A DNA stretch of 64,000 nt. Source: Blepharisma stoltei ATCC 30299. Its lineage: Eukaryota > Protista > Ciliophora. The notes under the pieces were generated by a model, which saw nothing but the letters and a program-made list of their open reading frames with translations, was not told the origin of the DNA and ran no database searches. Shown one piece after another: positions 14,951 through 64,000 of this stretch (position 1 is the stretch's first letter; each line of letters begins with the position of its first letter). The stretch covers positions 62,001-126,000 of the forward strand of contig CBFDEM010000026.1 in NCBI GenBank assembly GCA_965603825.1, written 5' to 3'. The translations under genes and the position numbers were made by a program.

Positions 14951-15293
14951 AATTTAAATCTCAATTAAAATATGCTTATATTTTTTAGCTTTAATTATTT
15001 AATGCAAGCATAGCCTCTTCAAGAAAATTACACTGGTTTCATTCTCTCTAAAACAAAATAGAAAATAACCGGCCAATTTTTATAATGTAGAAAGATCTAA
15101 AAAAATTAATGAATATTCATAAGAGATATCCATAAACTAATAAACTATGCTAGCATATATCATTTGCTGAAGACTAAAAGCTAAAGAAACATAACCCTTT
15201 CGTGAAAGTAAATAAACCGAAATATTAGTTTTCCATTTATGTAGAAACTAAGTTCACAAATTTCGCAAAAACATAACTAGAATATATATAAAA

Positions 15294-19649: not shown

Positions 19650-19801
19650 CTGGAGTTATAATATCAAGTATCGATATCGTGATGATTTGGGTGATGAATA
19701 ACTCGACCCTAGAAGAAGTTAAGAACGAAATTGATTTGAAAAAGAGGATGATTGAAATTCAGATGAGAGAGCTTGCAAATCTAAAAAATTTTATAGATTA
19801 A
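19650..19801 (+). pseudogene. C-terminal fragment of an ApoL-like paralog
   Basis: GVIISSIDIVMIWVMNNSTLEEVKNEI..., homologous to 22713-22860. Confidence 0.75.
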
Positions 19802-20182
19802 ACTAATAATCCTGATGTGATATAGCAATAGCAGCGATTTTTACATAAATTTGTGAATGATTAATAAAAATGATTTATATATTTTCAATTTTTTTGCCAA
19901 TTGGAAATTTATTTCTTGATTATTTTCAAACATCATCAAACACATATTATATGAATTCCTAAGTTATGCAGACATAAAAGCTTTTACAAAAATGAATTTT
20001 TTATCGCTATTAAGATTAAATTCAATAAAAACAGTCCATTAAAAAGCCAAAAAGTAAATTTTATATAATTAAATCAGCTATGCATATAAAAGAAAATAAA
20101 TAATTGCTTTTACCAATTTAATAAGTTAAAATTATAAAGAGATAAGTTTTCCATTTTTTGTAGATCTGTATTTTAATTGATT

Positions 20183-21151
20183 ATGGTTAAGCCAGCCTCT
20201 ATTCCTAAGAATTATTTATGTCCCATAACTCAAGAAATCATGGAAGACCCTGTTGTTGCTGCTGATGGATTCACATATGAGCGCAAAGCCATAATGCTTT
20301 GACTTGAGCGCAACGATATTTCTTGAGCGACTGAGAAAAAATTGAAACATAAAGACCTTGTCACAAATGACCGCCTTGCCTCTGAAATTTCTAAATTTAA
20401 TGAAAAAAATCCATCTCCAGACTCTTTAGAAGATAAAGCAGTTACTAGTATAGTACAGTGCCTTGAAAACAAAAGACTCCTTATTGCTCAGCTGCGGATT
20501 AGTATTGTAAAACTAACTGCTGTCCAAGAAGATCTCAGCGAACACTTGCTTAACTGTAAAATTTCCAATACAGCTGGAAATAGTGCAAGTATTGCAGGGA
20601 CTGGTATACTTTTTACCCCTTTGGCTCTAATAGGGATCGTAACTATTATTGCGGGCAGTTTAACTTCTATCGGAACAAATGTAACCCAATTTTTCATAGA
20701 GAAAAGCCTGCAGAAAAGAATGAAAAAAATTATAAAGGAAGAAGAAAAAGCTAAATTCCGCTATGAAGTTTCTCAAATGAAATCCCAATATTTCATTGGT
20801 CTGATGAATTTTGGAACAAATTGCTACCAAGTTGGCTCAAGAATATGGAAAATCATGAAGTACGCTCAGCTTTTTGAAGGCTTAAAAGCTACAAATATGA
20901 CTACTAAAAGCGTATTGGGCATTGGGGGCTGGTCATCAGCAGCAGCAGCTTGCAAAGGGACGAAGTTTGCATTATCCTCAGCCTTTGGGGCTGGACTATC
21001 TGCAGTTGATATTATAATCACATGGACATTTAAAAATTCAACATTGGAACAATTTAAAATACAAATAGATAATAGAGAAAAACACATTGAATTGTATACG
21101 AAAGAACTTGAAGATTGGGAAAAATCGTTGCCAAATGAATGGAAAATTTAA
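20183..21151 (+). CDS. U-box + ApoL-like protein (322 aa)
   Basis: ATG 20183 [39 protein letters not shown](TGA=W)L, in frame with ORF 20342. Confidence 0.85.
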
Positions 21152-21551
21152 TGCAGCAATGCCACTAAGGAAATAATTAATTAAAGTTAGCTTTAATATT
21201 AAAGCTTTCTAAAAATATATATAAATTAAAAATTATGATGAAATAAATAAAATGCTTGCAGATAAGGTGGAATTATGGCTTGGGGAAGTACTTGATCAGC
21301 AAAGCATATTAATAAAATTAAATAAAAATAAATAAGTGCATATATTGAGGCATATTTGAAACAAAAGTTTATAAATCAGAAAATCCTGAAAATTCTGACT
21401 TAATTAATAAAAGCTGGTGTATCCATTTTTTTAAAAGAAGTATTAGCATTTTGCTTACTATTTTATCAATAAAAATTAAATTCCATTTTTGTAGATTCCA
21501 TAAATCATAAATTTACATAAATTACAAATCCCTAATAAAAATTCCTAAATT

Positions 21552-21845
21552 ATGGTGAAGTCCAATAATGTTCCTGTAGATTTTCTATGCCCAATCACTA
21601 AAGAGATAATGGAAGATCCTGTAGTCGCTAGTGACGGGTACACTTATGAAAGGATAGCATATGGTTTGAAAGAAGCAATACTTCGCCTTTGGCTCGAGAA
21701 GATTTTAGAAATAAAGAACTTACTGAAAACCACCGTCTCCGTTCTAAGATATCTCAATATTTAGATCAACTTCATCGGAAAACAACCCCTTCAAATTAAG
21801 TTGAAGATGCCAACAGCCTTGTTTCCAAGAAAAAATATTATCTAA
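21552..21845 (+). pseudogene. Truncated U-box copy (type of the 18258/11679 genes)
   Basis: Small deletion after YERIA shifts the frame; TAA at ~21797; homology ends at ~21845. Confidence 0.8.
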
Positions 21846-22137
21846 GATTTGATTTACTTTGGATAATATAAATATAAGTCGCTTTTAAAATTAAAACCAT
21901 CATGACATAAAGCCTTAAGAATTGACTGCTTTGTGACATCTTTCTCCTTATTTATCTCGAAATTACTAAAATGGTGGTAATCTGTGTTGACCTATAAAAG
22001 GAGTTTTATAATTTCAATTAAATGCTGGGTGTTTGTATAGTAGTCATCCAAATCACCATCTCTGCTCCATAATTTCTCTATTTAATGACATTGCCAACAG
22101 AAAAATCTGCTGACGTCCACAATCTGTTGACTTAAGT

Positions 22138-22919
22138 CAATCTATCGAGGCTCCTTTGGCTTCCGAAGAGCTCAGCAAAGTGGTTTCCACTATGCAAAGC
22201 GCAATTTCTAAGAAAAAAATATATAAGCTTCATCATAATTTATATCATTCATCTAAACGATATCAAAGAAGACCTAGAAAATAGCCTATTTGATTGCAAA
22301 ATCTCCAACACTGTCAGAAATAGCGCAAGCATTGCAGGAACCGGTCTTCTTTTTACTCTATTAACCTTATTGAGCCTTAATTGCTGGCAGTTTAGCTTCT
22401 TAAGGATCCACCATAGCCCAACATTTCATAGAGAAAAATAAGCTTAAACAAATGAAACAAGTTTTAACTGATGAAGCAAAAGCTGCAGTCTGCTATGAAG
22501 TCTCTGAAATTAAAGCTCAATATTTTGTAGAAACCGCAAGTTGTGTAACGAAAGCCGTCATGATCGAGGCAAGAATTGAAAAAATGGCAAGTCAGTTGCA
22601 GACTTTGCAAGCTGTAAGAGTTGGTAATATTGCTGCGGAGCCTGTAATAAAGTTGTGAGTGATGAGGGAGTATTGGTAAGGTGCTGGGAAATTGCCGAAA
22701 TATTGTGCAATAGCTGGAGTTACAATATCAAGTATCAATATCGTGATGACTTGGGCGATGAATAACTCGACCCTAGAAGAAGTTAAGAAGGAAATTGATT
22801 GCAATGAGAGGATAATTAAAATGCAGATGAGAGAGCTTGAAAACCTAGAAAAATCTATAGCTTTAGCTAATAATCCTGCTGCAGTTGTGAAAACGTCGAA
22901 ATTCATTTCTAGGTATTAG
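22138..22919 (+). pseudogene. Decayed ApoL-like portion of a family member
   Basis: DIKEDLENSLFDCKISNTVRNSASIAGTGLLF..., with multiple frameshifts and stops. Confidence 0.8.
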
Positions 22920-23227
22920 ATTATGATTTTTATATAAATTTGTAATAATTAGCTTAATGACGGTTTAAAATAATCAAGAAATAAAATTTCAATTGACAAA
23001 AAATTTGAAAATATTTAAATTACTTTAAGTATACAGACATAAAACTCTTTATAGGCTAAATTCAATAAAAACAGTCCATTAAAAAGCAATTTTATATAAT
23101 TTAATTAGCTATACATATATAAGAAGAATAAATAGTTATCATATGCGATTGCTTTTATCAATTTAATAAGTTAAAATTATAAAGAGATAAATTTCCATTA
23201 ATGTAGATAATGCATTGTAATTTAATT

Positions 23228-24190
23228 ATGGTTGAGCCAGCTTCGATTCCTAAGAACTATTTGTGTCCAATAACTCAAGAAATCATGGAAGACCCTGTTG
23301 TTGCTGCTGATGGGCGCACGTATGAGCGAGCAGCCATAATGCATTGATTTGAGCGCAACGATATTTCTCCAGTGACTGGGAAAAATTTGAAACATAAAAA
23401 TCTAGTCGAAAATTGCCGCCTTGCCTCTAAAATCTCTAAATTTAATGAAAAAAATCCATCTCCAGACTCTTTAGAAGATAAAACAGTATCTAGTGTAGAA
23501 AAATGCCTCGAAAATAAACGAGCCTACATCCTTAATCTGCGGACTACTATAATTTATCTAACTGATATCCAAGAAGATCTCAGTAGACACTTGCTTAACT
23601 GCAAAATTTCCAATACAGCCGGAAACAGTGCAAGTATTGCAGGGACTGGTATGCTTTTTACCCCTTTAGCTCTCGTAGGAGTCGTAACTATTGTTGCGGG
23701 CAGTTTAACTTCTATCGGAACAACAGTAACCCAATATTTCATAGAGAAAAGCCAACTGAAAAGAATGAAAAAAGTTTTATTAGAAGAAGAAAAAGCTGCT
23801 GTCCGCTATGAAGTTTCTGAAATGAAATCCCAATATTTAATTGGTCTGCTAAGTTTTGGATTAAAAAGTTACCAAATTGGCTCAAGAATATGGAAAATCA
23901 TGAAGCACACTCAGCTTTTTAAAGCCTTAAAAGCTGTAGATGTGACTATTTTTTCTGCTAAAAGCGTATTAGGCATTGGAGGCTGGTCATCAGCAGTAGC
24001 AGCTTGCAAAGCAACGAAGTTTTTAAAAGTTTCAGCCTTAGGGGCTGGGCTCTCTGCATTAGATATTGTATTCACATGGGCTGTAAAAAATCCAACATTG
24101 GAAGAATTTAAAATACAAATTGATAATAAAGAGAATCTCATTGAAAAGGAGATAAAAGAACTTGAAGAATTGGAGAATGCGTTGGCATAA
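23228..24190 (+). CDS. U-box + ApoL-like protein (320 aa)
   Basis: ATG 23228 ...TYERAAIMH(TGA=W)FERNDISPVTG, in frame with ORF 23372; ends TAA. Confidence 0.87.
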
Positions 24191-24550
24191 ATCAAGCAAA
24201 GCTTAATGCAGCAATGCTGCTTTTAAATAATAAATTAAAAATGATTCTTTTCCTTTTTTTGAAAATTTAAGGAATAGCCTTAATATTAAATGTTTCCAAG
24301 AAAGCTTTCTAAAAATATTTATAAATTAAAAAAATTATGATAAAAATGATTACAGATAAGATGAAATTATGGCTTGGGAAGGTACTTGACCAGCAAAGCA
24401 TTGAAAAATTAAATAAAAATAAATAAATGCATATATTGAAGCATATTTGAAATAAAAGTATATAAATTAGAAAATCCTGAAAATTCTGACTTAATTAATA
24501 AAAAGCTGGCGCATCCATTTTTTTAAGACCAATGCATAAGGATTTTAAAT

Positions 24551-25534
24551 ATGTCTGAGTCAGCTCACATCCCTCATGAATATCTATGCCCGATCACTCA
24601 AGAAATGATGGAAGACCCTGTAATTGCTGCTGATGGAAACACATATGAGCGAGCTGCAATTACTAGCTGACTCAATCGCAGTAAAACTTCCCCAGTGACT
24701 GAAAAAGACTTTAAGCATAAAAATCTTTCCGATAACTACTTCCTCCGCTATGAAATTTCTCAATTTAATAAAAAAAATCAACCAGTATCAAGCCTTAATC
24801 AAGCAGAAGACCCTAACAAGCTACTTTCCAGCTTACAAAATTTATATATCAATAAAAAATCATACGTCGGTAAGCTGCGAACTTCTATCATTTATCTAGC
24901 CAACATCAAAGAAGACCTAGAAAGCCACTTACTTGGCTGCAAAATTTCCAATACTGTCGGAATCAGTGCAAGTATGGCAGGTACTGGCCTTATGTTTACC
25001 CCTTTAGCATTATTAGGGATACTCACAATGATTGCAGGAAGCCTTACTTCTGTCGGCACAACAGTAACCCAATACTTCATTGAGAAAAAGCAGCTCAAAA
25101 AAATGAAAAAAATCCTAATAGATGAAGAAAAAGCTGCAGTCCGATACGAAGTCTCCATGCTTAAAGCTAAAAATTTGGTAGAAGCCAGCAATTTAGCAAT
25201 GCAAAGCTACCATATTGGCTCAAGGATATGAAAAATGGTAAAAGAGTACCGAACTTTATCAGCATTAAAAGCTTTAAAGTCCACTAAAAGTATTTTTTCT
25301 TTAAAAGGAGGTTGGCCATCAATAATGGCTGCTGGGAAAAATGCCAAATTTTTGAAGGCGTCTGCTATAGGTGCTGGGCTATCAGCAATAGATATTGTGG
25401 CCACGTGGGCTGTAGAAAACTCAACATTAGAAGAAATTAAAAAACAGATTGAAAATAGAGAGAAAACTATTGAAAAGGAGGTAAAAGAAGTCCAGGAGAT
25501 AGAAAAAGCGTTGGTTCAAGACAGAGAAAATTAA
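24551..25534 (+). CDS. U-box + ApoL-like protein (327 aa)
   Basis: ATG 24551; two TGA codons at positions that are Trp in paralogs (the U-box W, and GSRI-W-K). Confidence 0.87.
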
Positions 25535-47699: not shown

Positions 47700-50415
47700 A
47701 TTTAGTGAAATTAAGTTATTAAATTTATCCAGACTATTCTTTAGCATTTAGAATCAAAATAGTTGCTTAATCACTCTTTTTGAGCTCTCTCATTTTTATT
47801 TTCTCGGCTTTCAACTAAAGCTCTCTTCTCCATTTAATTGGAGCAAGACATAAGCCTTGCAAAATAAAATATTCACATCAATAATCTTTGTTTTTAGCTT
47901 TTGCTATCCCTTTTTGAAGTTGAAAGTGTAGAAGGATTATAATTTAATGTTTGTTAATGGTTGGCTATCATATAAATCAATAAATGGTGTTTCTGTTCCT
48001 TCTTATTTCTTATGCAACTGCCTTAATTCGTCTTCCTTTAGAGGAAAAATCGAGATCATCAAATTTTAATCATTCGAAAACTTGAAAGCTTAGAGGACTT
48101 TTGTCTTCAGCAACCGTGACGAACTATCAAAACGTAGATTCTATTTAGGCTCAATATTATATCGATGCTGAAATTGGAACTCCTCCTCAAAAGTTCTCTT
48201 TACTAGTTTCCTTAAGGACCTCTTGAATTTTGGTGGATTTAAAAAACTGTGCATCGTGCCGAAGCTGAACTAATAAATTTGACCCAGACAATTCCTTAAC
48301 GCTGAAGAGAGGAAATAAGTATTTGACCATAGACACTGTGGGCCAGATGAAAGGTAAAATTGGAAACGAAGCAATTCGGATAGGAGACCTTAGTGCAAAA
48401 TCTCAGGGCATTGTTTTAGTCGATGATGAGGATGGAACTGATGATCTAAAGCCAGATGGTATTTTTGGACTTGGTTTTAGCGCAGCTAAAGATGGAGCTA
48501 CCTCTATTTTGAATACTTTATATGAGCAGAATGATATTGAGCACTTGCTTTTTTCACTTTATTTAAGTGACTCAAACAGCATTTCTGACTTGCCTGATTA
48601 TGGCCAATCAATGCTTATTATAGATGGCTATGATATTTCTAAATATGCAGCAGAATCACAGTTTACATTCCTAAATGTAGCAAATTCTGATGGATTTTGG
48701 GAATTGGATTCTGATTGTGTTGTTTTTGGCCAAAAAAGCTTTGCAGGAGGGTCTAAAGCAAGAATAAGTCCAGGTACAAGCTACATATTGGGACCAATAG
48801 ATGCTATCAGTGGAATTTTAAAGCTATTAGAAGCTAATTATACTTGCTCGGCTGACAATTTAGGACAACTAAATTGTAATTGCAACGAAAATTACCCTGA
48901 CTTTGTATTTCAACTAAGTGGAGTTCAATTCAAAATAAAATCAGCTGGGTATTTGCAAAAAGTTGATGAATATTGCCATCCAACTTTTGGCTATTCAACA
49001 GTTACCAATACATGGATTTTAGGTGACACTTTTCTCAGAAGATTTTATACACTTTACGACAAAGCCAAGCGCAGCCAATTGTACATCAAGCTCTGTTAAT
49101 TGCACAAATCCAACTAATCTTGTGCCAAACCCCAACCCAGGCAAAATAAATTGCACATCATGCTCAAATTTATCTTATTCTAGCCAAGGCAGCATCAGTG
49201 AAAAGGCTTACATTGGGTTTGGTGTGCTCATTACATTAGGTGCTTTATTTACAGTAACTATCTTCCTTTTTATTATTACTTATTACTGTGATGCAATCAA
49301 GAACACGTTAAGAGAATGTTGCCCAAAAAAGAATCCTGTTGCTCCTTCTGCAGAAAATTCCAATAATACTTTGAATGCTAGCAATATTCCAGATATGTTT
49401 CCTCCAAATAGTCCTACTAACTCGGTTTCTGAAAATGAAATAACCCCTCAGGGCATAAAAGAAAAAACAGCTGCGATTTTAAACAGAGTGAATAATCCAG
49501 AAACCGAGAATGATTTCAGGAGAACTTTTACACGAATATCAGAGAATGCTACTAATGCTGCTAATAATCCAACATATCAAAGTTTTATCAACGCTTAGGA
49601 TCGGGTTAGCTCTCTTTATCTTCTTAGAGAAAATAATAAATACGGTAGAACCTCTTTGATTGTTTATGACACTGAAAATGAAATCGAAAAAGAGATAGTG
49701 TTAGAAAATACTCCAGAAAAACTGAATAAGTGTACTTGCATTACTTATATACCAGGCGGTAAAATTTTCTGTTTTGGAAATGATCCTGCTTCTGGAGTTA
49801 CATTGCTAATCAATAATAATAATCAAGTTGAAATGCTGCGATCTGGAACACCTTGCAGCAGCTCATCAGCTACCTATTTTAATAATAGCGTGTAACTTTA
49901 TCTGAGAGATTTGACTTGAAAAGTAAAAATTGGCAAAAATTAATGCCATTGCCTAAAGCTGATTATGAATGCCACTGTTTGGAGTTTAATAATAATATTT
50001 TGATTGCTGGTCGTCAAAATCAAAATATTTTGAGATAGTCAATAAAAGATAACAAGTTCGAGCCAATAAATAGCTATTATTTTGAGGGAGGGGTGAGAAA
50101 AATCCTGTTTAATGCAGGTAGCTTATGGTTGATTGAGTGCAGCAAGATGGGGAAGATATATGAAAGTATAAGGGATGATAAGTCTTGGGTAGAAATAACT
50201 AATCTTGATAAGTTTTTTGGTGATCCTTCACAAGTTTATTGCTCTTATAATAAGGAAGCAATATATATTGGCTGCGGAGGAGAATTTGATGGGTATTATA
50301 AGTTTAGCTTAAGCCAAAAAACAACTTACAAGTTAGAGATCAGTAGATTCTAATTCTTAAATTTAATCAATTATTTGCTTTAGACAATTTTTTTATTAGA
50401 TTTTTAATTTCTCAT
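47700..50415 (+). repeat. Direct duplication; partner ~51685-54680
   Basis: Upstream (~290 nt), coding and downstream sequence align. Confidence 0.88.
47984..50353 (+). pseudogene. Pseudo-pepsin/TM/Kelch receptor copy 1 (frameshifted)
   Basis: Near-identical to the 52006 gene, with intron 48134-48148. Deletion/frameshift at ~49060, TAG at 49596, a further deletion at ~49893 and TAG at ~50036. Confidence 0.85.
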
Positions 50416-50437
50416 TTTAGAGAGTTAAGGGTTGCAC

Positions 50438-50610
50438 CCATCCCATTTACCTCATTTTTATTTATAGGGCTTTTATCTTCAGCTGCTGTGAGAAATTTCC
50501 TTTAAAGAATATTATAGCGAAAAAATTTTGAAGCAAGAAGTAGCACAAGATTAGCCATAATTAAAAGTATTTTATGATAATTATAAGTCAATGAGACTAT
50601 TTTAATATAA
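50438..50610 (+). pseudogene. Deletion relic of a copy-3-type receptor gene
   Basis: atcccatttacctcattt...gctgtga matches 55995-56047, and attttatgataattataagt matches 57310-57330. Confidence 0.65.
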
Positions 50611-52005
50611 ATTGACCTTAGCAAATTAAAATGGCAATTATTGAAATTCCAAAAACTTGCTCTATATTTGTTTTTTGATGTACAGCTAATTTTTAAATAA
50701 TTATTATAGCATCATTATGATCAATTGACATTGCATTTACAATGCTTTTAGCTATGGAAGATAAATAAAGGGTGCGGTAGCCTCAATCAATCCCATCTCT
50801 AATGTGTATTTATGTATGGCATAGCCGATTAAGTGAGCTGTCTTTTAGGCAACTTTCTTCACCGATTAATATTATTTCACAAAGTGTTGTCATACCAATA
50901 AAATTTTATAACATTTGGGACTGATAAAAGCAAATAAAAAGAAATTGAAAAAATCTGAGAAAGGATTATTTAGAAGCAGCAAGGGAAACAAAATTTTCAA
51001 TTTGATTTATCTTAGCATGGCCAAAAAAAAAGACATACAAGACGCTTATATAAAATTAATAAATAATTAGCAAGCAGCATACTTGAAATTATATTCATCT
51101 ATTCATAGGATTATTAATAAAATTGTGCTTAAATTATTTTTGATATTATTTATCTAATTATACTAAATCTCTTTATTCTTTAATTGCATCTTCATCTTCG
51201 CTCTCTTTCTCTTCATATTAATCATGTCTCTTTAGTTATTTAATGATTTCTTTATTCAATACTTGCAAATAATCATCTCTTAGCTGCTTATAGGCGATTT
51301 GCTCAAGATTTAGATTTAGGGTGCAAATTAATGAATAATGCGCAGAAATAAACCTCTCCAGAAGAATCCACTATTTCAATTGAAAGGGTGCGAAAAGTTA
51401 TATGAAATAGCATCAATTTTTGGGTATAATAAAGGAACTGTCTGTATTGGAGCATTAGGACAGTTTATAAAATTAAGAAGAGGAGAAAGAAAAGCAATGC
51501 AGCAAATAAAAATTTGATAGTAATTATTATTAATTTTATGGTTTTATTTGATATATTGGTGGTGCATGAGAAGCTTTTGGGAAGAATATTGAAACATATA
51601 AAACATAATTTACCCAGATATTTAATATGAAGCAAACATTCAAGAAAATTCTTTTCGTTTTTAAACTATTTACAGTGATTTAATTTATGAAATTAAGTTA
51701 ATAAATTTACTCAAACAATTCTTTAGCATTTAAAATCAAAATAATTGCTTAATCAGTCTTTTTGAGCTCTCTCATTCCCATTTTCTCGACTTTCAACTAA
51801 AAGCTCTCTCTTCTCCATTTAATTGTAGCAAAAATTTTAAACTAAGTAGCCACTCTAGATAAACAGACATAAGCCTTGCAAAAAATCATATTGGCATCAA
51901 TAATCTTTGTTTTTAGCTCTTGCTATTCCTTTTTGAAGCTAAAAAAATTGTAGAAGGAATTGTAATTTTCAGTTTGATGATGGCTGTTTATCATATAAAT
52001 CATAA

Positions 52006-54597
52006 ATGCTGTTTCTGTTCCTCCTAATTTCTTATTCAACTGCCTTAATTCGTCTTCCTTTGGAGGAAAAATTGAGATCATCAAATTTTCATCATTCGAA
52101 AACATCTTGAAAGCTTAGAGGACTTTTGTCTTCAGCAACCGTGACGAACTATCAAAACGTAGATTCTATTTAGGCTCAATATTATATCGATGCTGAAATT
52201 GGAACTCCTCCTCAAAAGTTTTCTTTACTAGTTTCCTTAAGGACCTCTTGAATTTTGGTGGGTTTAAAAAACTGCGGATCGTGCCGAGGCTGAACTAATA
52301 AATTTGACCCAGACAGTTCCTCAACGCTGAAGAGCGGGAATAAGTATTTGACCGTAGACACTGTGGGCCAGATGAAAGGTAAAATTGGAAACGAAACAAT
52401 TCGGATAGGAGACCTTAGTGCAAAATCTCAGGGAATTGTTTTAGTCGATGATGAGTATGGAACTGATGATCTAAAGCCAGATGGTATATTTGGGCTAGGT
52501 TTTAGCACTGCTAAAGATGGAGCTACCTCTATTTTGAATACTGTATTGTCGCAAAATAATATTAAGCACTTGCTTTTTTCACTTTATTTTAGTGACTCAA
52601 ACAGCATTTCTGACTTACCTGATTATGGCCAATCAATGCTTATTATAGATGGCTATGATATTTCTAAATATGCAGCAGAATCACAGTTTACATTTCTAAA
52701 CGCAGCAAATTCTGATGGGTATTGGGAATTGGATTCTGATTGTGTTGTTTTTGGCCAAAAAAGTTTTGCAGGAGGGTCTAAAGCAAGAATAAGTCCAGGT
52801 ACAAGCTACGTATTGGGACCAAAAGATACTGTCAATGAAATTTTAAAGCTATTAGAAACTAATTATACTTGCTCAGCTGACAATTTAGGACAACTAAATT
52901 GTAATTGCAACGAAAATTACCCTGACTTTGTATTTCAACTCAGTGGAGTTCAATTCAAAATAAAATCAGCTGGGTATTTGCAAAAAGTTGATGAATATTG
53001 CCATCCAACTTTTGGCTATTCAACAGTAACCAATACATGGATTTTAGGTGACACTTTTCTCAGAAGATTTTATACGCTTTATGACATGGAAAACAAAAAA
53101 ATCGGACTTGCCACTGTTGGTTCTATATCCCAAATAAGCAAACGGGCATCGTTATGTAGTTCAAACAACTCTGGATCGTCTGGAACTGGCTCCAATTGCA
53201 AAAATTCAACAGGCTCCACCAATGGTACAAATTCAGGAAACTGCACTAATCCTGTGCCAAACCCAAATCCAGGCACAACCAATTGTACATCAAGCTCTGC
53301 TAATTGCACAAATCCAAATAATCCTGTACCAAACCCCAACCCAGGCACAATAAATTGCACATCAAGCTCAAATTGTACCAGTTCAAGCCATAGCAGCAGT
53401 TCGTTCATTTCCAGTAATTATTTTGGCTTGACAGCAATTTCATGAACTTTATTATGGAGCTTATATATTATTTGTCACTGGGATACAATTAAGGGCAAGT
53501 TCAGAAAATGCTGTTCTAAGAATAATACTATTGATGCAGATCCCAATTTTTTTGATGTTGGCCTAACTCCGCCAATTTATGATAGGATTCCTTCAAATAG
53601 TCGTACAAACTCGGTTTCTGAAAATGAGATAGCCCCTCAGAGCATAAAAGCAAAAACAGCTGCGATTTTAAACAGAGTGAATAATCCAGAAACTGAGGAT
53701 GATTTCAGAAGAACTTTTACACGATTATCAGAGAATGCTAGTAATGCTGCTAATAATCCAACATATAAAATTAACTGCCAAAGATTTATTGACGCTTATC
53801 ATAGGGTCAGCTCTCTTTATTTTCTTAGAGAAAATAATTTCTACGGTAGAACCTCTTTGGTTATCTATGACACTGAAAATGAAAGAGAAAACGAGATAGT
53901 GTTAGAAAAGACTCCAGAAAACCTGCAGAGCTGTACTTCCATTACTTTTATTCCAGGTGGTAAAATTTTCTGTTTTGGAAATTATCCTGCTTCTGGAGTT
54001 ACATTGATGCTCGATGAGCATTATCAAGTCGAAAAGCTGAAATCTGGAACACCTTGCAGCAGCTCATCAGCTACCTATTTTAATAATAACGTGTACTGCT
54101 TTGGAGGAAAAAATGGCAATGATTTGCTAACTTTATCTCAGAGATTTGACTTGAAAAGTAAAAAATGGCGCAAATTAAGACCGTTGCCTAAAGCTGATTA
54201 TGAATGCCACTGTTTGGAGTTTAATGATAATATTTTGATTGCTGGTCGTGAAAATCAAAATATTTTGAGATATTCAATAAAAGATAACAGCTTCGAGACA
54301 ATAAATAGCTATTATTTTGAGGGAGGGGTGAGAAAAATCCTGTTTAATGTAAGTAGTTTATGGTTGATTGAGTGCAGAAATAGAGGGAAGATATGTGAAA
54401 GCAGGGGAGATGAGAACTCTTGGGTAAACATAGCTAATCTTGATGAATATTTTGGTGATCCTTCACAAGTTTATTGCTCTTATAATAAGGAAGCAATATA
54501 TATTGGTTGTGGAGCATACGTTGACGGGTATTACAAGTTTAACTTACGCGAAAAAAATATGGAAAAGTTGCAAAAATTAGTTAATACTAAGTCTTAA
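52006..54597 (+). CDS. Receptor-like protein: signal peptide, inactive pepsin-like (A1) domain, Ser/Asn/Pro stalk, TM, Kelch repeats (~858 aa)
   Basis: Intron 52159-52173; QYY...IGTPPQKF, DGIFGLG, WILGDTFLRRFYTLYD; catalytic sites read SLRT and SPGT; TGA=W in the TM; Kelch VYCFGG...RFDL..KKW..L.PLP. Confidence 0.85.
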
Positions 54598-55904
54598 ATT
54601 TAACCAAATATTTATTTTACTATGCCACATATTTTAATTATTTTTAGGCAATTTTTTATTAGATTTTAATTTCTCATTTTAAGAATTTAAATAATAGCAA
54701 ATTTTCTGATTCTCATGATTTATTTAATATAATAATTATTAAGATTTAAAGATTATTCAATGAAAATTAATATAATTTATCTTTAGCCAGGAAGAATCAA
54801 AAGCAATTAATGATCATATCATATAATTATATTATGATTCTTGCCATAATCTATTACCGATTGAAAAAAGTTTCTCACTAGGTGATTTAAAAATTTTATT
54901 GAAAAATATGCATTTCCCAGTAATTCTGCTCACTCTTAAAGGATAGCAAATTGTTTTATATTATCAATAGAATTATGTCAACTGTGCAGCACTATATCTT
55001 TATTAATAAAAAATAACTGCTTTTGATTAAAGAGCTTTTGTCTACTTCCTGTCAAGCATCCGAAGATTTAATAATGAAACTATTAAATTTTTATAAAGAA
55101 GTCATCGGCTTTCAAAATCTCATAAAGCTCAATCCCAAATTAATAATTACCTAAAATAGAAGTAATAACAATTGAATTTAATTAAGCTGTTTATTCCAAA
55201 CAAAGTATATAAACATTTTAAAGTTATTAATCAGATAAACTTTGACTCTTAAGGTGGTGAAAAAAGTAATATTTATTTAGGCAATTAAAAGCATTATGTA
55301 ATGAAGGTTTGAAATAAGCTATATGAAAACTCTAAAGGCTTTAGGGATATTGAAACGAAGATAAAGTTGCACAAAAGGCGATCTCCTTAAAGCAATAGCT
55401 GAAAAGTCAGGAAATGGGTATTTTGAAGAAGATGAATCTGAAAATATTTTATTCAAGTAGGTTTTGGGTTAGAATACCTCAATTCTAATGAATTATTCGC
55501 CTAGATCTCAGGATGCAAACATTCTTTTGGGTGATAATAACGATGTAAGCATATGGGATTTCTGAATTTCTTGCAGTTAAAATATCTCGTCTATTCTGGA
55601 TCGATTCTTTGTGGTGAGTTTTTTCTCTCTGCACTTTTTCTTAAAATATTAGACCAAATAAATAGGATTATTAAATTGATGTGCTTGCTAAGATATTAAG
55701 ACTGGAAAATATTAGACATATTATCTCTTTGTTTCGAATGATATAATTTTAATTTTTTCTTGCAATAAAGCATTTTAATAGGATTTCCCTTAAGAAAGCA
55801 TACAAAAAATTGTAGAAAGAATTGTTATTAGTAGCTAAACTTACTAGATCAATTTTTCATTGCATCATAATTTTATGAAGAGCTTCAAATATTATAATTA
55901 ATCA

Positions 55905-57295
55905 ATGATTTTTTTACTTATCTTCGTTATTTTTGCAGAAGCTGCTATTCAAATCCCTTTGCATGAAAATTATGAGTCCTTAAGCGATTCATCTATCCCA
56001 TTTACCTCATTTCAATTTAGAGGGCTTTCATCTTCAACTGCTGTGACCAATTTGCAAAATGTGAGCTTTATTTAGAGTCAATATTATATGACAGTAGGCA
56101 TTGGAACGCCTCCCAAAATTTTTTCTGTGGGATTATCTCTAGAAACCTCTTGAATTCTCGTAGATCAAAAAGAATGTCTGCAGTGCCGCAGATGGACTTA
56201 TAAGTTTTATTCATTGCAATCTGCAACTTTCAAAAAGACCAATAAGAAATGAAACACAGACAGTGCTTACCAAATGCGGGGAAATGCTGGAAAAGACACA
56301 GTCATAATAGGGAGCTTCAACTCTACATCTCAAGCAGTATTTTTAATAGACAGCGAGCATGGGATGGACAATCTTAAGGCAGATGGAATATTCGGGCTGG
56401 GCTTTTCTAAAGGCCAAGCTGTCTCAATTTTAAAAAGATGATATGACGAAAATTATATTGAAAATATGATTTTTTCTCTTTATTTAAATGACATAAGTGG
56501 CATTTCTGGCTTGCAAGATAAAGGTCAATCAATGCTTATTATAGATGGCCATGATATTTATAAATATGCAGCAGAAGAAGAATTCACTTATATAAGCGTG
56601 TTAAACTCCGATGAGTATTGAGAATTGAGCCTCGATAAAGTCAGTCTAGGTGATTTGACCTTTAATAGTGGCAATAAAGCAAGGATCAGCTCAGGTGAAA
56701 AAGGAATCCTTGGGCCAAAAGAAGCTATTGATGGAATTTTACAACTGCTGCAGAGCAGCGCTAACTGCAATACTGATAGTAATAATCAGCTGACTTGTAA
56801 TTGCAATGCAAATTATCCTGATTTATTAATTCAATTAAGTGGAAATGCATTTAGAATCAAGCAAGCTGGGTATCTGCATAAATTAAATAAAGATTGCTCC
56901 CTAGTATTTGGCTACTCAGAAATTGATGATATATGAATTCTAGTGATGCTTTTCTGAGAAGGTTTTATACCCTTTATGATATGAAAAACGCGAAAATCGG
57001 CTTTGCTACTGTAGGAAATCAGCCACAAATTGAAGTGGGCTCAGTATCTCAAATTGAGGATTCTGATAATAGTAATAGCTCAATGGAAACCTAAAAGTTT
57101 GCTATGATTATTGCAATACCCACATTCTTTACTATTGTTATCATTATTGCAGCTGTGATTATCTTTATATGCATAAGGAGAAAAAGACATAATCATTCAG
57201 ATAGTGAAGCCGAAGAAAAAGCCGAAGAAAAAGCCGAAGAAAAAGATCATAAACATCGCAAGGGACGTCGGAAACAAGAAAAAAATTATGAATAG
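55905..57295 (+). pseudogene. Pseudo-pepsin/TM receptor copy 3 with a short charged tail
   Basis: Intron 56061-56075; 1-nt deletion in LGD at ~56943; TAA at ~57092 where paralogs have Trp; tail contains (AEEK)x3. Confidence 0.8.
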
Positions 57296-57424
57296 CAATA
57301 ATTAAAACCATTTTATGATAATTATAAGTAATCAAGACTATTTTTATATTATTTTCTATAAATTAAATTTTGGGCGATAATCAAATTCAAATTTTTTTCC
57401 TTTTTGCCTTCCTAGGTTGCATAA

Positions 57425-57820
57425 TTTGAAGCATTTTCGATTATCTCTGGCTCTCAACCCTCAAAAGCAGCCTTTACCCATTCAATAGCACAAAATCTGT
57501 CTGGAGTTTTATATTCCAGCAGCTTCACTTCTTCTATCAATGCTTTCTTCAATGTATTTGCTTTTAATTGTACAAGTCATTTTAAATCCTCTAAAAATGC
57601 TTACATCTAATTCTTTAGCATATTTAGTGTATTGGCAGGAATAAAATTATCTAGAGCAAGAAGAAGCAATTAAAGCTGTCTTTTCGAGCTCCTTTTCTGC
57701 ACTGTTCATGTGTTGTTCTTGCTTATTTTTCCTTATCCATTTTCTAAAATTATCAAGAGATAATGGCTTATCTTTGCAAAATTCAGCAGCTGTTATTAAT
57801 ATACAAGTAAATTTTTATCG
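57425..57820 (-). mobile_element. Degenerate pogo/Tigger-like (DDE_1) transposase relic
   Basis: Broken frames give KFTCILITAAEFCKDKPL, FIPAN(fs)TKYAKELDVSIFRGFK and AIEWVKAAFEGWEPEIIENA, in the order expected for DDE_1. Confidence 0.6.
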
Positions 57821-58466
57821 TTTTTTAAGTTATCCAAAGTGCTTGAGAGCTAATAAACTGAATTTTTAGATGGCAATTATGTAAATAGAATTAAGTCTAG
57901 CCATCTTTATAGTTCAGCACACAGTTTGATCTTTTAAAGAAACTTTAGTTAAGCAAGCTTCCAAATCATAAAAATAGTTTTACTGAGAGAAAATGAAACT
58001 CATTGGCCCAAGGATTTCAGATAATTTGTTTTCGTCTCACAGTCATAATAATACTAATTCAAGAATCTTTAGGCTAAATTGATTTAAATTAAAGTTTTTG
58101 TATTAAGTCATTTCTTCATTGAGTTAATTCAATCTTGATTGGTGTTTTTTAGTTATTCCTTGGATTTAGCATATCTATGGTGCTATAGCTCACCATAAGC
58201 AGTGGATAACTTTTAATTCAAAGAGGGAAATAAGCATCTTAATTGATCAATTTTTATATTTTTAAAGGCAGTCTCGCAGTTGACTATAATGTCCTTTGCC
58301 AATTTTTATTTCTCAATCTTACCTTATAAAAAAAGATAATCAGACCTTTTCTAGCATTTTCTAAAGTACCTTAAGCCTCATAGAAAATGTAGAAACAATA
58401 GGTATTAGCTAATAAATTTCCTTTACTTAGAAAGAAATTTTATAGAATAATCATTATAATAATTAA

Positions 58467-60881
58467 ATGATCATTTTATTCACTCTTGCTTCTTTAGCAG
58501 AAGCCTTAATATTACTCCCTTTATTTGAAAAAGCAGACTTTCCAAATTTGCATCCTCCCTCTTCATTCAGGCAACTTTCAGCATCAACAGGTCTGACAAA
58601 CTATAAAAATGTAACCTTTATTTAGAAACAATATTTCGTCCAGATAGGAATTGGAACCCCTCAACAGTATTTTTCAATGCTATTATCCTTAAAATCTTCC
58701 TGAATTTTTATAGGTGGGAAAGGGTGTTTAAGTTGTCGAAGCTGGACAAATAAATTTGATATCACCAGATCATCGACCTATAAAAATGATTTTAAATATT
58801 TGATTATAGATTCTATGGGCCTAGAAGGAGATGCTGGAAGAGACAAGGTCAATATTGGAGGAATTGATGCTAAATCTCAAGGAATTATTGTAGAGCGCAA
58901 GGAGTATAATATGGATAACATAAAAAGTGATGGAATACTTGGGCTAGGCTTTAGTTCTTCTAATAATGGGACTACTCCTATTATTAACACTTTATATGAG
59001 CAATATAATATTACCCACAAGATTTTTTCAATCTACTTAAATGATTTAAGCAATCCATATGACTTGCCTAACTTTGGCCAGTCAATGCTTATTATTGATG
59101 GCTATGATTTAAATAAATACTCAGCAGAAAAATCATTTAAATATATAAGCTGCAGAGCAAGCCAGGAAGGATATTGGCAAATGGACTTCGATCATGCCAT
59201 TTTTAATGGAATAACATTTACAAGCGGCTATAAAGCAATAATTAGTGTAGGAACCAGCTTAATCTTAGGGCCAAAAGAAGCCATTAATGGCATTTTAAAG
59301 CAATTGCATAACAATTATAGCTGTGACGATAATAATTTAGGGGAGCTCTTTTGTGATTGCGGTTCGAATTATCCTGATCTTATAATCCAAATAAGCGGAG
59401 TAAAATTTACAATTAAACCAGCAGCATATTTTTATAAATGAAATGATTATTGCTGGCCATCATTTAATTATACGAATGTGCCAAATACATGAGTGTTAGG
59501 TGATACTTTTCTCAGAAGGTTTTATACAGTTTATGATATGGAAAACATGAAAATTGGTTTTGCTACTGTTGGGAATGTATCTCAAATCTATTCAAATGCA
59601 ACTAATACAGGCGGCTCTTCTGGAAATAATTCTACATCAGGTACTAATAGCACAAACCCAGGCTCACATGGAGGTGGGAACAATTCTACAACGAGCGGAG
59701 GTTCATCTGGAAGCGGCTCTGGCACTAATAATTCTACAACAGGTGGAGGTTCATCTGGAAGCGGCTCTGGCACTAATAATTCTACAACAGGTGGAGGTTC
59801 ATCTGGAAGCGGCTCTGGCGCTAATAATTCTACAACAGGTGGAGGTTCATCTGGAAATGGCTCAGGTTCTACAGGTGGAGGGTCATCTGGAAATGGCTCA
59901 GGTTCCACAGGTGGAGGGTCATCTGGAAATGGCTCAGGCTCCAGCGGTGGAGGATCAGGGTCTTCTGGAGGTAAAAACCCAGACAATAGTTCTTCTCATA
60001 AAAGCAGTAGCTCAAATGATGATTGAAAGCTTTATTTATCTATAGCTATTCCTACATCTGTTCTCTTTTCTATATTGGTTTTTGTCATAATTTTTCTTTA
60101 CATCAAGTACAGAAAAAGAATGAAAAATCAATCAGATGATAACTTAGAAGAGTGCAGAATTTGTATGGGGCGTTTACCTTTACGTCTTTTGAAAAAGCTA
60201 ACATGCAACCATTATTTTTGTAGTAAAGATTTACGTCAAATGTTAGAGTTTTACATTGCAGAAAATGCTATTGCAAAAGCTATGAAGTGTCCTAACGAAA
60301 ATTGCAATGGTGAAATTAGCTCGCTGATTATGCAAGATATATTATCCAAAGAGGCAATGGAGAAGCTGAATTATTTCATGATAAATAGAAACTTCAGAAT
60401 TATCAAGTGTCCCAAGTGCAATCAAAAATTTGAATCGTCACAGGAAAGGAGAGCAACGTGCATAAATTGCTATATGGATTTTTGCAGTTACTGCCAAGAG
60501 ATTTGGCATGAAATAGATAATTGTCGAGAAATGTTTATACAGAGGAGATTAAAAGAATTAGAAGCAAGTGGAGAAATGGTGGCGCAGTGTCCTGGATGTA
60601 AAGCCCCATATTTAAAGGATCACCGTTGCGACCATGTGCAATGCGTAGACCCAAAATGTAATGTACTTTTCTGCTTCGGATGCTCTGCGAACAGATCGCC
60701 TATAATTGCTCATTGAGAACATTATCATAGGCCAGATTGTGCACATTTTCAAGAAAACAATAGGCAAGTCCGGGATCGATATTCGCCAGAAAAATGTAGT
60801 GAATGCAAAATATTGGGCAGACTTTGCCTTCCGCCTCAAAAATTGCGCGTTCCAAGAAGATTTGGACCTGGAGAGTCATAA
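58467..60881 (+). CDS. Receptor-like protein: signal peptide, inactive pepsin-like domain, Gly/Ser stalk, TM, RBR (RING1-IBR-RING2) E3 ligase (~799 aa)
   Basis: Intron 58611-58625; TGA=W joins three track ORFs; catalytic sites SLKS/SVGT. RING1 CRIC..CNH.FC..CPNENC; IBR CPKC..CINC...FC..C...WH...C; RING2 CPGC....KDHRCDHVQC...C...FCFGC. Confidence 0.87.
59680..59960 (+). repeat. Coding tandem repeats (48-nt NNSTTGGGSSGSGSGT units, then 36-nt STGGGSSGNGSG units)
   Basis: Repeated aataattctacaacaggtggaggttcatctggaagcggctctggc and acaggtggagggtcatctggaaatggctcagg. Confidence 0.92.
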
Positions 60882-62348
60882 AATAAGATATGAAAATTAA
60901 TAATAAATCTGAATTTTAATAAATTCTACTTAAAAATGATCGTTTTATAATGTAGCTATTTTTAATTTATTTGCTTGCTGCAAAAATTGATGACTTGCTT
61001 ATGGAAAAAGCGGGTGGTGCGCAATCCTCAAATATCTAGTTATTGGTTTCTTGGATACAAGTTGTCTAGTGATCTAAAAAAATGATAATATCTATAATCA
61101 GTTTCAAGCTAATTAACCGATCAAGGCTAGCTGAGTTTTCACAATCCTTCTATTTTCTGATTTCTTACACTTTATATATGCAATGCCTTATTTTCTACTC
61201 AAATGACTTTTTCAAACATAAACTCTCAAAATTCTAAAATTACCTTAAAATAAAAACACTCAAATTTATCTTATTTTGATTTTCAGCTAATTCATTTAAT
61301 AACTTATCATTTGTATTATTAAAACCAATTTAAATCTCATCTATGGATTTTATCAAAATCTAAAATGAGTAATTATGAGATATATTATAAGCCAGAGCCT
61401 TCTTAATTAATTTAATTATATAATGCATTTAGATAATAGTATTTCTACCAATATCGATGGAAATACGCGCTACCAATTAAAATTAGTTGGCAGAATACAA
61501 AAGTTTTATGCTTGTTGTGTTTCTCTATTGCTTACTTGTTTCAGAGTGAATAAAAAAATTGATTAATGATTTCATGCTTTATTTAGATATATAGATCCTT
61601 AGAGATTCTAAATTGTATGATTATCAGAATTTATTTTTATTTCTTATTTTTGTGTCTTTCCTTGCTCTCCTGATGCATAATCAAGTCAACTCATGAAGGG
61701 CAAATAACTGATTTTTGTATAGCCTATAAAAATAGTGTAATAACCATTATTAAAATTGAAATGCTTCATATAAATATTTTTATTTTGATCACGATAACTT
61801 CTGCACATGTGTGCTCTAGCAAGAGAGAAAGACAAAATGCACTCTACATGTGCACCCAATAGCTTTATATGCATCTGAGGTTCAGGTATATGTCTAAATA
61901 AATCTGAAGCCTTGTCAACGACCTTTTAGAAATTCTAGAAAATCATTTTTCCTGTCTCAACCTTTTCAGATATGAATAGTAGGCCAATATATAATTTAGT
62001 ATTAGATCAATCAGCTTGACGAGCTGACTATAGTGGATCCCACTAAATACCCAAGCAGTGCTTAAGCCTATTTCTAGTGGTAAGTGAAAAACTTAAGATT
62101 AAGATCGATGCAGAGGTATCGCATGGTTCTATCAATAATCATATAAAACAAAAGGATAATTCCAAAAATTAGTTTCTCTAATAATTTTGCATCACTTATA
62201 TGGGAGAATGGAGTTAGGAAATCTGGTTTAGTGCATCTATACTTCTTTGAGAAGTGTAGAAGCAGTTGTCATTAGCGGCTAAATTGACTATTTCTCATAA
62301 TTTACTTAAGCGAATAAACTCATGGCACCATCCCATAATAAATAATCA

Positions 62349-64000
62349 ATGATCATTTTATTTATCTTCCTTTCTTTAGCAGAAGCCTTAATCAGCGTCC
62401 CTCTGTATAAAGAACTGAAACCCTTAACAAACATTTTAAATAAACCTCATCCCTTTTCACTCAGAAGACTTTCATCTTCATCAGCGGTGACAAACTATGA
62501 AAACGTACGCTCTATTTAGTATCAATATTACACTCAGATTGGAGTTGGAACACCTCCACAAAACTTTACAGCGGCGGTATCACTAAAGTATTCTTGGATT
62601 TTTATAGATAATAAAAACTGTTCTCAATGTCGGGATTCGACAATCAAATTTGATTCCAACAGCTCATCAACCTTTCAAAGTGGGAATAAATATTTGACCT
62701 TAGGCAAGTTAGAAGGATATACAGGGAAAGACACAGTCAAATTAGGAGATGTTGTTGCAGAATCCCAAGGAATACTTTTACTCAACAAGGAGTCAGGTAT
62801 AGATACCCTTAAGTCGGATGGTATACTTGGCTTAGGTTTTACCACTTCAAATGATGAAAATCCCTCTATTTTGAGTATTTTATATGCCCAGAATGACATT
62901 AGCCATAAGATTTTTTCGATTTACTTAAATGATTGCAACAGTCCATCTGACTTGCCTGATTATGGCCCATCAGTGCTGATGATTGATGGCCATGATATAA
63001 ATAAATATTCAGCAGAAAGCAATTTTACATATATTAAAGCAGCAAATTCAAATGGATCTTGGCAAATGGACTTCGATAGTGCTTCTTTTGACGGGGTTAT
63101 TTATACAAGCGGATCTGCAGCAATAATTACGCCTGGGACCAGCTTTATTTTAGGGCCAACAGATATCATTAATGATATTTTGAAGCGCTTGCACAATAAT
63201 TATAACTGTTTCGGTTTTAATGATAAAGATCTTTCTTGCAATTGCAATTCAAATTATCCTGATTTTATACTCCAAATTAGTGGAGTAAAATTTACAGTCA
63301 AACCAACAGCGTATTTGATGAAAAGTGGTCTATTCTGCGTCCCAACCTTTGATTATTCAGCCATACCCAATATATCCAATGCATGAGTATTGGGTGATCC
63401 TTTCCTAAGAAGGTTTTATTCACTTTATGACATGGATAACATGAAAATCGGCTTTGCTACTGTCGGACATACATCTCAGATAAGCTATAATAATTCTTCT
63501 AGCTCAAACAGTTCTGGCAGTGGATCTTCTGGAACAAACTCTACTTCAGGCTCTAACAGCACAAATTCAGGTAGCGGTTCAGGAACTTCAGGAAATGGCT
63601 CTGGGACGACCAATCCACCAACAGGCTCAGGATCCAATGGCTCAGGTACCCATAATTCAACAGGCTCAGGGTCCAATAATTCAGGTACCCCTAATTCAAC
63701 AGATTCAGGTGGTACAAATTCTAATAACAGTAGCTCTTCTGATAGTTCAGATGACAACTGGAAGCTAATCCTTGCTATAGCACTTCCTGTGTCAGCAGTC
63801 TTCATAGCTTTGGTAGCATTTTTGGCTATTCTCTTCATAAAAATCAGAAAAAGTCGCAAATCAGTCCAAAAAACGCTGGAAGAGGAAGACTTCCGAACAC
63901 GTGAAGAAGCGCAGGCACAAGTAGCTTCCAACAATTTTCCCGATAAAGATTATCAATCGAAAGAGACAGCTGCTTATTCAGCATTTGGCCCTTTCAAACA
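62349..64000 (+). CDS. Receptor-like pseudo-pepsin/TM protein copy 5; cytoplasmic part runs off the window end
   Basis: Intron 62505-62519; catalytic sites SLKY/TPGT; (TGA=W)VLGDPFLRRFY; Ser/Gly/Asn stalk; TM LILAIALPVSAVFIALVAFLAILFI followed by KIRKSRK. Confidence 0.85.

What the first reader, a model, noticed from the sequence alone, without database searches (positions are those of the whole stretch)
58467..60881. Single-chain pseudo-protease-TM-RBR ubiquitin ligase
Seen: one ORF (TGA=W) from signal peptide to a complete RING1-IBR-RING2. The RING2 catalytic Cys is present (KDHR-C-DH, equivalent to GCNH); one RING1 ligand is atypical (CSKD). Known: receptor-like E3s with ectodomains are typically simple RING types (PA-TM-RING such as RNF43/ZNRF3), whereas membrane RBRs (RNF144, RNF19, RNF217) are anchored C-terminal to the RBR. 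Inference: a type-I receptor RBR ligase whose activity could be gated by ligand binding.
Basis: partly seen in the sequence, partly recalled or inferred. Interest (0 to 1): 0.85.

Follow-up and report, generated by a model that had tools for sequence, protein, structure and literature searches.

The report
Ciliate dead-protease receptor RBR ubiquitin ligase
A gene of the ciliate Blepharisma joins an enzymatically dead pepsin-type outer domain, through one membrane anchor, to a complete parkin-type (RBR) ubiquitin ligase inside the cell, a receptor-like layout so far described only with the simpler RING ligases.

Summary
Real gene, architecture confirmed, with one correction: it is not a single ORF. 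An in-frame TAG (58623) lies in a 15-nt intron. The genome is the Blepharisma stoltei macronucleus (UGA=Trp); the product is public, but only with automatic names (CAG9320681.1, 'PGA_1'). Order: signal peptide, pepsin fold lacking both catalytic Asp, 151-aa glycosylatable G/S stalk, one TM, RING1-IBR-RING2 with catalytic Cys721/His723, and a probable third zinc site. It matches 46 of 49 strongly conserved columns of its RBR clade; the RING1 Cys>Asp also occurs in three unrelated homologues. The ectodomain descends from active membrane-anchored pepsins, the RBR from a soluble otubain-RING-RBR clade. Two paralogues keep RING1 only, so the fusion is old and under purifying selection. No such fusion was found in another species. 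Best reading: an RNF43/GRAIL-like client-recruiting membrane E3 using RBR chemistry (0.5). Ligand gating is unsupported (floppy stalk, no recognisable autoinhibitory domain). RNA contigs are patchy and none spans TM to RING1; activity is untested. The scan noted this same DNA before, not other DNA.

The parts
58467..58505 (+). Signal-peptide-like hydrophobic N-terminus (aa 1-13)
   Evidence: Hydropathy; same pattern in all five window paralogues. No dedicated predictor was run.
58506..58610 (+). Pro-segment-like stretch ending in R-x-L-(S/L)-(A/S), rest of exon 1
   Evidence: R-x-L is shared by all five window paralogues and C35; low pLDDT in the model. A processing site is inference only.
58611..58625 (+). 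15-nt GT..AG intron, phase 0, holding the in-frame TAG (58623)
   Evidence: removed in the public product P0001, whose pipeline calls introns only from 10 or more spliced reads (10.1101/2021.12.14.471607); the equivalent intron of the next paralogue is spliced in a contig (62505).
58629..59570 (+). Pepsin (A1) fold, catalytically dead; both DTG motifs and the flap Tyr are lost
   Evidence: Pfam Asp; AlphaFold pLDDT 82, Foldseek pepsinogen/pepsin E 2e-29, TM about 0.79; alignment A2.
58686..58694 (+). Position of first catalytic D-T-G, here S-L-K
   Evidence: S-L-[K/R/E] in all six close paralogues.
59244..59252 (+). Position of second catalytic D-T-G, here S-V-G
59571..60023 (+). 151-aa Gly/Ser/Asn/Thr stalk built from 48-nt and 36-nt tandem repeats, 11 N-glycosylation sequons
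   Evidence: the public product lacks one 36-nt unit.
60030..60104 (+). Single transmembrane helix, acidic before and basic after (type I, C-terminus in the cytosol)
   Evidence: Hydropathy and positive-inside rule; 17 of 19 sequons lie N-terminal of it.
60153..60305 (+). RING1 (C563-C613), sixth ligand Asp588, RBR-type Cx4C last pair
   Evidence: Z 12.8 to RNF144A RING1, 11.2 to HOIP RING1; Asp at this place in 3 of 67 homologues and both RING1-only paralogues.
60408..60524 (+). IBR (C648-C686), all eight ligands present
60565..60566 (.). Excision point of a 102-bp germline-limited insertion (IES-like, short terminal direct repeat) between IBR and RING2
   Evidence: Assembly GCA_914767885.1 carries the gene with this insert and is otherwise identical.
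60588..60740 (+). RING2/Rcat (C708-C758): catalytic Cys721 (60627-60629) and His723; third triad position is Leu734
   Evidence: Aligned to ARIH1 C357/H359; columns.
60711..60827 (+). Clade-specific C-terminal extension with invariant H749, C777, C780, C787: probable third zinc site
   Evidence: Invariant in 68 of 68 sequences; confidently modelled; zinc binding is inferred, not shown.
60879..60881 (+). TAA stop
62349..64000 (+). Next tandem paralogue: dead pepsin-stalk-TM-RING1 only (645 aa, runs past the window end)
   Evidence: a 2518-nt contig covers its 5' part with the intron spliced.
47984..57290 (+). Three upstream tandem paralogues: two with a Kelch-type tail (47984 broken, 52006 intact), one with a short basic tail (55905, frameshifted)

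Best explanation
A lineage-specific receptor-type E3 ligase made by domain shuffling. Shown here: the architecture, the loss of protease chemistry, an intact RBR ligand set with catalytic Cys/His, the origin of both halves, and purifying selection. Inferred: the protein is a type I membrane glycoprotein at the cell surface or on food-vacuole/endosomal membranes. The dead pepsin head, held out on the glycosylated stalk, binds the outer or luminal part of a membrane client. This places the client's cytosolic tail next to the juxtamembrane RBR. RING1 binds E2~Ub, ubiquitin passes to Cys721 and then to the client (and probably to the ligase itself), and the complex is internalised or sorted for degradation. 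It would work like RNF43/ZNRF3/GRAIL but with thioester (RBR) chemistry. Control would come from co-recruitment or clustering, not from a conformational signal through the membrane.
For: Continuous frame from exon 2 to the stop; same in-frame ectodomain-TM-RING1 junction at three loci on two contigs, which form one clade in both the ectodomain tree (95/94) and the RING tree (SH-aLRT 89). RBR keeps 46 of 49 columns conserved in at least 80% of 67 homologues (family median 47). Ectodomain dN/dS 0.39-0.47 against the RING1 paralogues at dS about 0.7; IBR-RING2 dN/dS about 0.2 against soluble relatives, where dS is near saturation. Rough chance that 23 ligand/catalytic codons survive neutrally: 5e-6 to 9e-10. 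Low-depth RNA-like contigs lie on the gene (59411-59673, 59831-60119, 60234-60384, 60466-60562) and not on the flanking spacers; variants are 13 synonymous to 9 non-synonymous and include TGA>TGG. Dead pepsin folds act as protein binders elsewhere (xylanase inhibitor, EDGP; PMC11313796). Ectodomain-mediated substrate recognition is the documented mode of GRAIL (PMC4021871).
Against: No activity, location, client or ligand data. Third triad residue is Leu (E/D in 42 of 67 homologues), and two conserved extension residues are changed (G>W750, N>E751). Only one full-length copy; two sister genes lost IBR-RING2 and two other array members are broken, so tails turn over quickly. No contig spans TM to RING1 (gap 60120-60233); runs are only guessed to be RNA and depth is 2-8. 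No orthologue seen in any other species.
Confidence: 0.5

Rival explanations
1. Ligand-gated signalling receptor: an extracellular protein or peptide binds the dead cleft, clusters the receptor and switches the RBR on, building ubiquitin chains as a signal.
For: Receptor-like family with exchangeable cytosolic modules (Kelch, RING1, RBR, short tails). RBRs are commonly activated allosterically by ubiquitin, which clustering could feed (PMC7458406). Blepharisma uses a glycoprotein mating signal (PMC9942806); nothing links it to this gene.
Against: A flexible 151-aa stalk of variable length uncouples head and TM; no autoinhibitory domain is recognisable; no ligand or induction data.
Confidence: 0.15
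2. Self-tagging scavenger or decoy: the head binds a soluble ligand (for example a protease inhibitor or prey protein) and the RBR ubiquitylates only its own tail as a built-in endocytosis signal.
For: Lys-rich juxtamembrane and RING1-IBR linker; sits among at least 58 pepsin-family matches, many of them active membrane-anchored enzymes that a decoy could shield; sister genes with short or RING1-only tails suggest the head can work without a ligase.
Against: A full RBR with an extra conserved zinc module is more than a sorting tag needs; no uptake data.
Confidence: 0.13
3. Secretory-pathway quality-control ligase: it stays in the ER or Golgi, the dead cleft recognises unfolded or unprocessed luminal peptides, and the RBR marks clients for degradation.
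For: Pseudoproteases are known in this role (iRhoms, Derlins; own knowledge); the topology is the same as in the best explanation.
Against: A long, heavily glycosylatable stalk and a fast-evolving tandem family fit a surface or vacuole protein better; no KKxx-type retention signal at the C-terminus; such machinery is usually conserved, and this gene was found in one species.
Confidence: 0.1
4. Weak or dead ligase: the RBR is folded but no longer transfers ubiquitin and serves as an E2- or ubiquitin-binding scaffold, or is on its way to loss like its sisters.
For: RING1 Cys>Asp, triad Leu734, G>W750; two sisters lost IBR-RING2; low expression.
Against: The same Cys>Asp occurs in an independent clade of full-length homologues and predates the split of the three paralogues; non-Cys triad residues vary among active RBRs (PMC7458406); all IBR, RING2 and extension ligands are kept over dS about 0.7.
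Confidence: 0.1
5. Artefact: two genes or a misassembly.
For: No read or contig was seen to bridge TM and RING1.
Against: No TAA/TAG between exon 2 and the end; the same junction at three loci; same arrangement in the germline-inclusive assembly (not independent of the somatic one).
Confidence: 0.02

Closest known systems
PA-TM-RING receptor-type E3s (RNF43, ZNRF3, GRAIL/RNF128, RNF13, RNF167)
   Same: Signal peptide, protease-related but non-catalytic ectodomain, single type I TM, juxtamembrane E3 in one chain (PMC4021871; PMC12458338).
   Different: The ectodomain is a whole dead pepsin on a 151-aa stalk, not a PA domain; the ligase is a three-domain RBR with a catalytic Cys, not a RING-H2. 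It works like them (inferred) but is not a member.
RBR E3 ligases (ARIH1, HOIP, HOIL-1L, RNF216, parkin)
   Same: RING1-IBR-RING2 order, ligands, catalytic Cys and His, predicted fold. An extra zinc element after the RING2 core recalls HOIP, HOIL-1L and RNF216 (PMC7458406); homology of these extras was not shown.
   Different: No Ariadne, UBL, RING0 or UBA domain; ectodomain and TM N-terminal of the RBR; RING1 ligand 6 is Asp; triad Glu/Gln is Leu.
Membrane RBRs RNF19A/B, RNF144A/B, RNF217, and the RBR-plus-C-terminal-TM genes of this genome
   Same: RBR held at a membrane; nearest by shape in the Atlas search (TM 0.62).
   Different: Their hydrophobic segments follow the RBR (10 of 30 loci; human ones from own knowledge) and they have no folded ectodomain.
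Soluble otubain(C65)-RING-RBR proteins of this genome (C3:542k, C1:591k) and of about 65 environmental sequences
   Same: Closest RBR (39-45% identity), same KDxxCxHVxC catalytic loop and C-terminal extension.
   Different: Soluble, with an OTU domain and several RING-like fingers in place of the ectodomain and TM.
Non-catalytic pepsin-fold binders (TAXI xylanase inhibitor, EDGP, basic 7S globulin) and membrane-anchored A1 proteases (BACE-like layout)
   Same: Dead A1 fold used for binding (PMC11313796); type I anchor as in its active relatives in this genome.
   Different: None is known to me or in the papers searched to carry a cytosolic ligase; here both Asp are lost.

Membership tests
RBR E3 ligase | RING1, IBR, RING2 in tandem | tested here: met
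RBR E3 ligase | Zinc ligand sets of the three domains | tested here: met
   All present except RING1 ligand 6 (Asp), which is also Asp in 3 of 67 homologues
RBR E3 ligase | Catalytic Cys in RING2 with His two residues on | tested here: met
   C721/H723 align with ARIH1 C357/H359
RBR E3 ligase | Third triad residue Glu/Gln (not universal in the family) | tested here: not met
   Leu734; E/D in 42 of 67 homologues; triad is incompletely conserved among RBRs (PMC7458406)
RBR E3 ligase | E3~ubiquitin thioester and transfer activity | not testable with these tools
   Needs biochemistry
Pepsin family A1 | Bilobed pepsin fold | tested here: met
   Pfam Asp full length E 4.7e-52; Foldseek TM about 0.79 to pepsinogen
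Pepsin family A1 (active peptidase) | Two D-T/S-G motifs and flap Tyr | tested here: not met
   S-L-K, S-V-G, flap Tyr absent: a non-peptidase homologue
PA-TM-RING | PA ectodomain | tested here: not met
   No PA hit; ectodomain is Asp
PA-TM-RING | RING-H2 as the only ligase domain | tested here: not met
   RING-HC-type RING1 followed by IBR and RING2
PA-TM-RING | Signal peptide and single type I TM before the ligase | tested here: met
   Hydropathy, charge bias and sequon distribution; no dedicated predictor or experiment
RNF144/RNF19/RNF217 membrane RBRs | TM C-terminal of the RBR, no folded ectodomain | tested here: not met
   TM precedes RING1; none after
Receptor-type E3 (functional class) | Surface location and ectodomain-dependent ubiquitylation of a membrane client | not testable with these tools
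   Needs localisation and proteomics

The most novel reading that the evidence does not exclude
A natural ligand-switched 'receptor ubiquitin ligase': binding of an extracellular protein to the dead pepsin head clusters the chain and turns on a thioester-forming RBR whose extra zinc module sets chain type, with the RING1-only paralogues acting as decoys or inhibitory partners.
Probability: 0.15. Interest if true: 0.85.

Novelty: new variant of a known kind. Interest (0 to 1): 0.6.

Why it matters
Receptor-type E3s described so far use RING domains (PMC12458338), and membrane RBRs have no ectodomain. This gene shows that a catalytic-cysteine RBR can be built into a single-pass receptor-like chain and be kept by selection, so the RNF43/GRAIL design arose again from different parts in a ciliate. 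The tandem array records the steps: active anchored protease, dead binder, then swapped cytosolic tails. The roughly 260-residue cytosolic part has no obvious autoinhibitory domain and is a simple test case for RBR regulation at membranes and for engineered surface degraders. Its donor clade, which joins an otubain domain to an RBR, was not found described in the papers searched. The limit on importance: one full-length copy in one species, and no function shown.

Tried and rejected
Single uninterrupted ORF: rejected (TAG in an intron). Active protease: rejected (both Asp lost). Asp588 as a sign of a dead RING1: not supported. Gene C1:591k as the direct donor: closest by identity, but not sister in the tree, so only the clade is claimed. 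Searches for the fusion elsewhere were blank. Of the best 150 hits among 1.84 billion representatives, only this protein and the C35 paralogue have an Asp domain; relatives above 50% identity would be hidden there. Full-length word searches by Asp region and by RBR region gave 3 hits each, none a fusion from another species. A dead-clade profile found only B. stoltei proteins above 35% identity. The ESM Atlas showed no Asp+IBR cluster (clusters of 50 or more only). Ten paper searches found no description of this gene or layout; the 2007 RBR family review was not held.

Full report
Source. The window is G000:C26:62001-126000 of a 41.46-Mb, 64-contig genome. The product is in public sets as Blepharisma stoltei CAG9320681.1 / UniRef100_A0AAU9J5W5, with automatic names only ('PGA_1', 'RING-type domain-containing protein'). 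B. stoltei has a 41-Mb macronuclear genome, UGA=Trp and mostly 15-16-nt introns (PMC9942806). Amino-acid numbers below follow the genomic frame from 58467 and include the five intron codons.

Observation. The frame holds five TGA, one TAG (58623) and ends at TAA 60879. The TAG is the end of a 15-nt phase-0 GT..AG intron, 58611-58625, found at the same place in all five paralogues of the window. The public product lacks it; that pipeline calls introns only from at least 10 spliced reads (10.1101/2021.12.14.471607), which is indirect evidence of transcription. The public product also lacks one 36-nt unit of the stalk repeat; this may be an allele of the second strain or a real splice.

Ectodomain. 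After a signal-peptide-like start and a short pro-segment comes a complete pepsin fold (Pfam Asp E 4.7e-52; model pLDDT 82, Foldseek pepsinogen E 2e-29). Both catalytic motifs are replaced (S-L-K, S-V-G) and the flap Tyr is gone. S-L-[K/R/E] at the first motif is shared by all six close paralogues, which suggests a remodelled rather than a randomly decayed cleft (inference). A 151-aa stalk follows (G 50, S 48, N 21, T 17), then one TM with acidic residues before and basic residues after. Seventeen of 19 N-glycosylation sequons lie before the TM. This is type I topology by inference; no dedicated predictor was available.

Ligase. RING1 starts 16 residues after the TM. The region matches ARIH1 (E 6.6e-11); a 68-sequence profile matches ARIH1/2, parkin, HOIP and RNF216. 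The model (pLDDT 94) hits HOIP, RNF216, ARIH1 and HOIL-1. Of 49 columns conserved in at least 80% of homologues the gene keeps 46 (family median 47); the exceptions are D588, W750 and E751. D588 is shared by three full-length homologues of a separate clade and by both RING1-only paralogues. C721 and H723 are in place. The third triad position is Leu, where 42 of 67 homologues have E/D; these residues vary among active RBRs (PMC7458406). H749, C777, C780 and C787 are invariant in all 68 sequences beyond the standard RING2 ligands and probably form a third zinc site (inferred).

Origin. The genome has at least 58 pepsin-family matches, many of them active with stalk and TM. In the tree the dead genes form a clade nested in these anchored enzymes (100/100 and 97/95), and the three RING-bearing genes group together (95/94). 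The window's tandem array carries Kelch tails (47984, 52006), a short tail (55905), the RBR (58467) and RING1 only (62349); C35 holds a second RING1-only gene. Their RING1 domains also group (SH-aLRT 89). The simplest history is one fusion with a full RBR, then loss of IBR-RING2 in the sisters. The RBR belongs to a clade of soluble otubain-RING-RBR proteins: C3:542k has Peptidase_C65 (E 1e-27) and C1:591k a weak remnant (E 7e-4), and about 65 environmental homologues share the motifs. The exact donor is unresolved.

Selection and expression. Ectodomain dN/dS is 0.39 and 0.47 against the two sisters at dS about 0.7 (active pairs 0.15-0.32); IBR-RING2 gives about 0.2 against soluble relatives, with dS near saturation. 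Neutral survival of the 23 ligand and catalytic codons would have a chance of roughly 5e-6 to 9e-10 (rough, and it assumes the full RBR predates the split). Four runs of one study, guessed to be RNA and held as contigs, give short low-depth pieces along the gene and none in the spacers next to it; none bridges 60120-60233. Their variants are 13 synonymous and 9 non-synonymous, including TGA>TGG at 59441, which supports TGA=Trp. The germline-inclusive assembly has the same gene with a 102-bp insert at 60566.

Distribution. No other species showed the fusion in the representative, word-index, metagenome or Atlas searches; each has the limits listed under Tried and rejected. Within the genome, among the 30 best RBR loci only this one has an ectodomain plus TM before the RBR; ten have TMs after it and one (C11) has N-terminal TMs without an ectodomain.

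Mechanism. Most likely (0.5) it recruits a membrane client through the dead head and ubiquitylates the client's tail through Cys721, leading to uptake or degradation, as GRAIL and RNF43 do with RING chemistry (PMC4021871, PMC12458338). Rivals: ligand-gated signalling by clustering (0.15), self-tagging scavenger (0.13), ER/Golgi quality control (0.10), folded but inactive ligase (0.10), artefact (0.02). Architecture, origin and constraint are shown; location, clients, ligand and activity are inferred.

Membership and verdict. It is an RBR by domain order, ligands and catalytic Cys/His, and a non-peptidase member of the pepsin fold family. It is not a PA-TM-RING nor an RNF144/19/217-type protein. 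No paper describing it was found in ten searches. It is a new variant of a known kind (receptor-type E3) with an unusual catalytic module; interest 0.6. Earlier notes of this scan on the same DNA agree and were not counted as support. Method note: exons and stop-free pieces were searched apart by reference; the joined step was left out, and full-length analyses used the public record P0001.

Noticed in passing
G000:C3:542.5-545.6k (L043) and G000:C1:591-593.9k (L042); P0003, P0004, P0009, P0023, P0041: A soluble family joining an otubain (Peptidase_C65) domain, several RING-like fingers and a C-terminal RBR with an extra zinc extension: a deubiquitinase and an RBR ligase in one chain. The OTU catalytic motif is intact in C3 and several homologues and degenerate in C1. 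No description found in one paper search.
   Followed up: partly
G000:C11:686.9-688.2k (L074): 403-aa protein with N-terminal hydrophobic segments, an extra RING and an RBR whose RING2 has Cys but Tyr for His: a second, unrelated membrane-before-RBR layout.
   Followed up: no
window 47984-64000 and G000:C35:345.7-347.5k, C55:50k: Tandem family of dead pepsin-stalk-TM genes with swapped tails (Kelch, short basic, RBR, RING1 only). 47984 is broken after the pepsin domain; 55905 has a frameshift near 56945 (pseudogene or assembly error).
   Followed up: yes
window 58506-58610 and paralogues: All six dead paralogues end the pro-segment with R-x-L followed by Ser-rich residues; a possible site for processing by another protease, since these proteins cannot self-activate.
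   Followed up: no
window 60566; L045: 102-bp germline-limited insert with short terminal direct repeats inside the RBR coding region; five further inserts lie within 12 kb in the same assembly.
   Followed up: partly
window 61792-62349: Contigs at depth up to 23 cover about 550 nt upstream of the next paralogue's start, continuous with it in one contig: a long 5' leader or a small upstream gene (an 81-aa gene is called nearby in L045).
   Followed up: no
window 9479-25534: Several similar U-box-like genes (CPIT..EDPV motif) in both orientations.
   Followed up: no
G000 genome-wide: At least 58 pepsin-family and 66 RBR-profile matches; catalytic Asp loss occurred independently in a second pepsin lineage (C52/C15).
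   Followed up: partly
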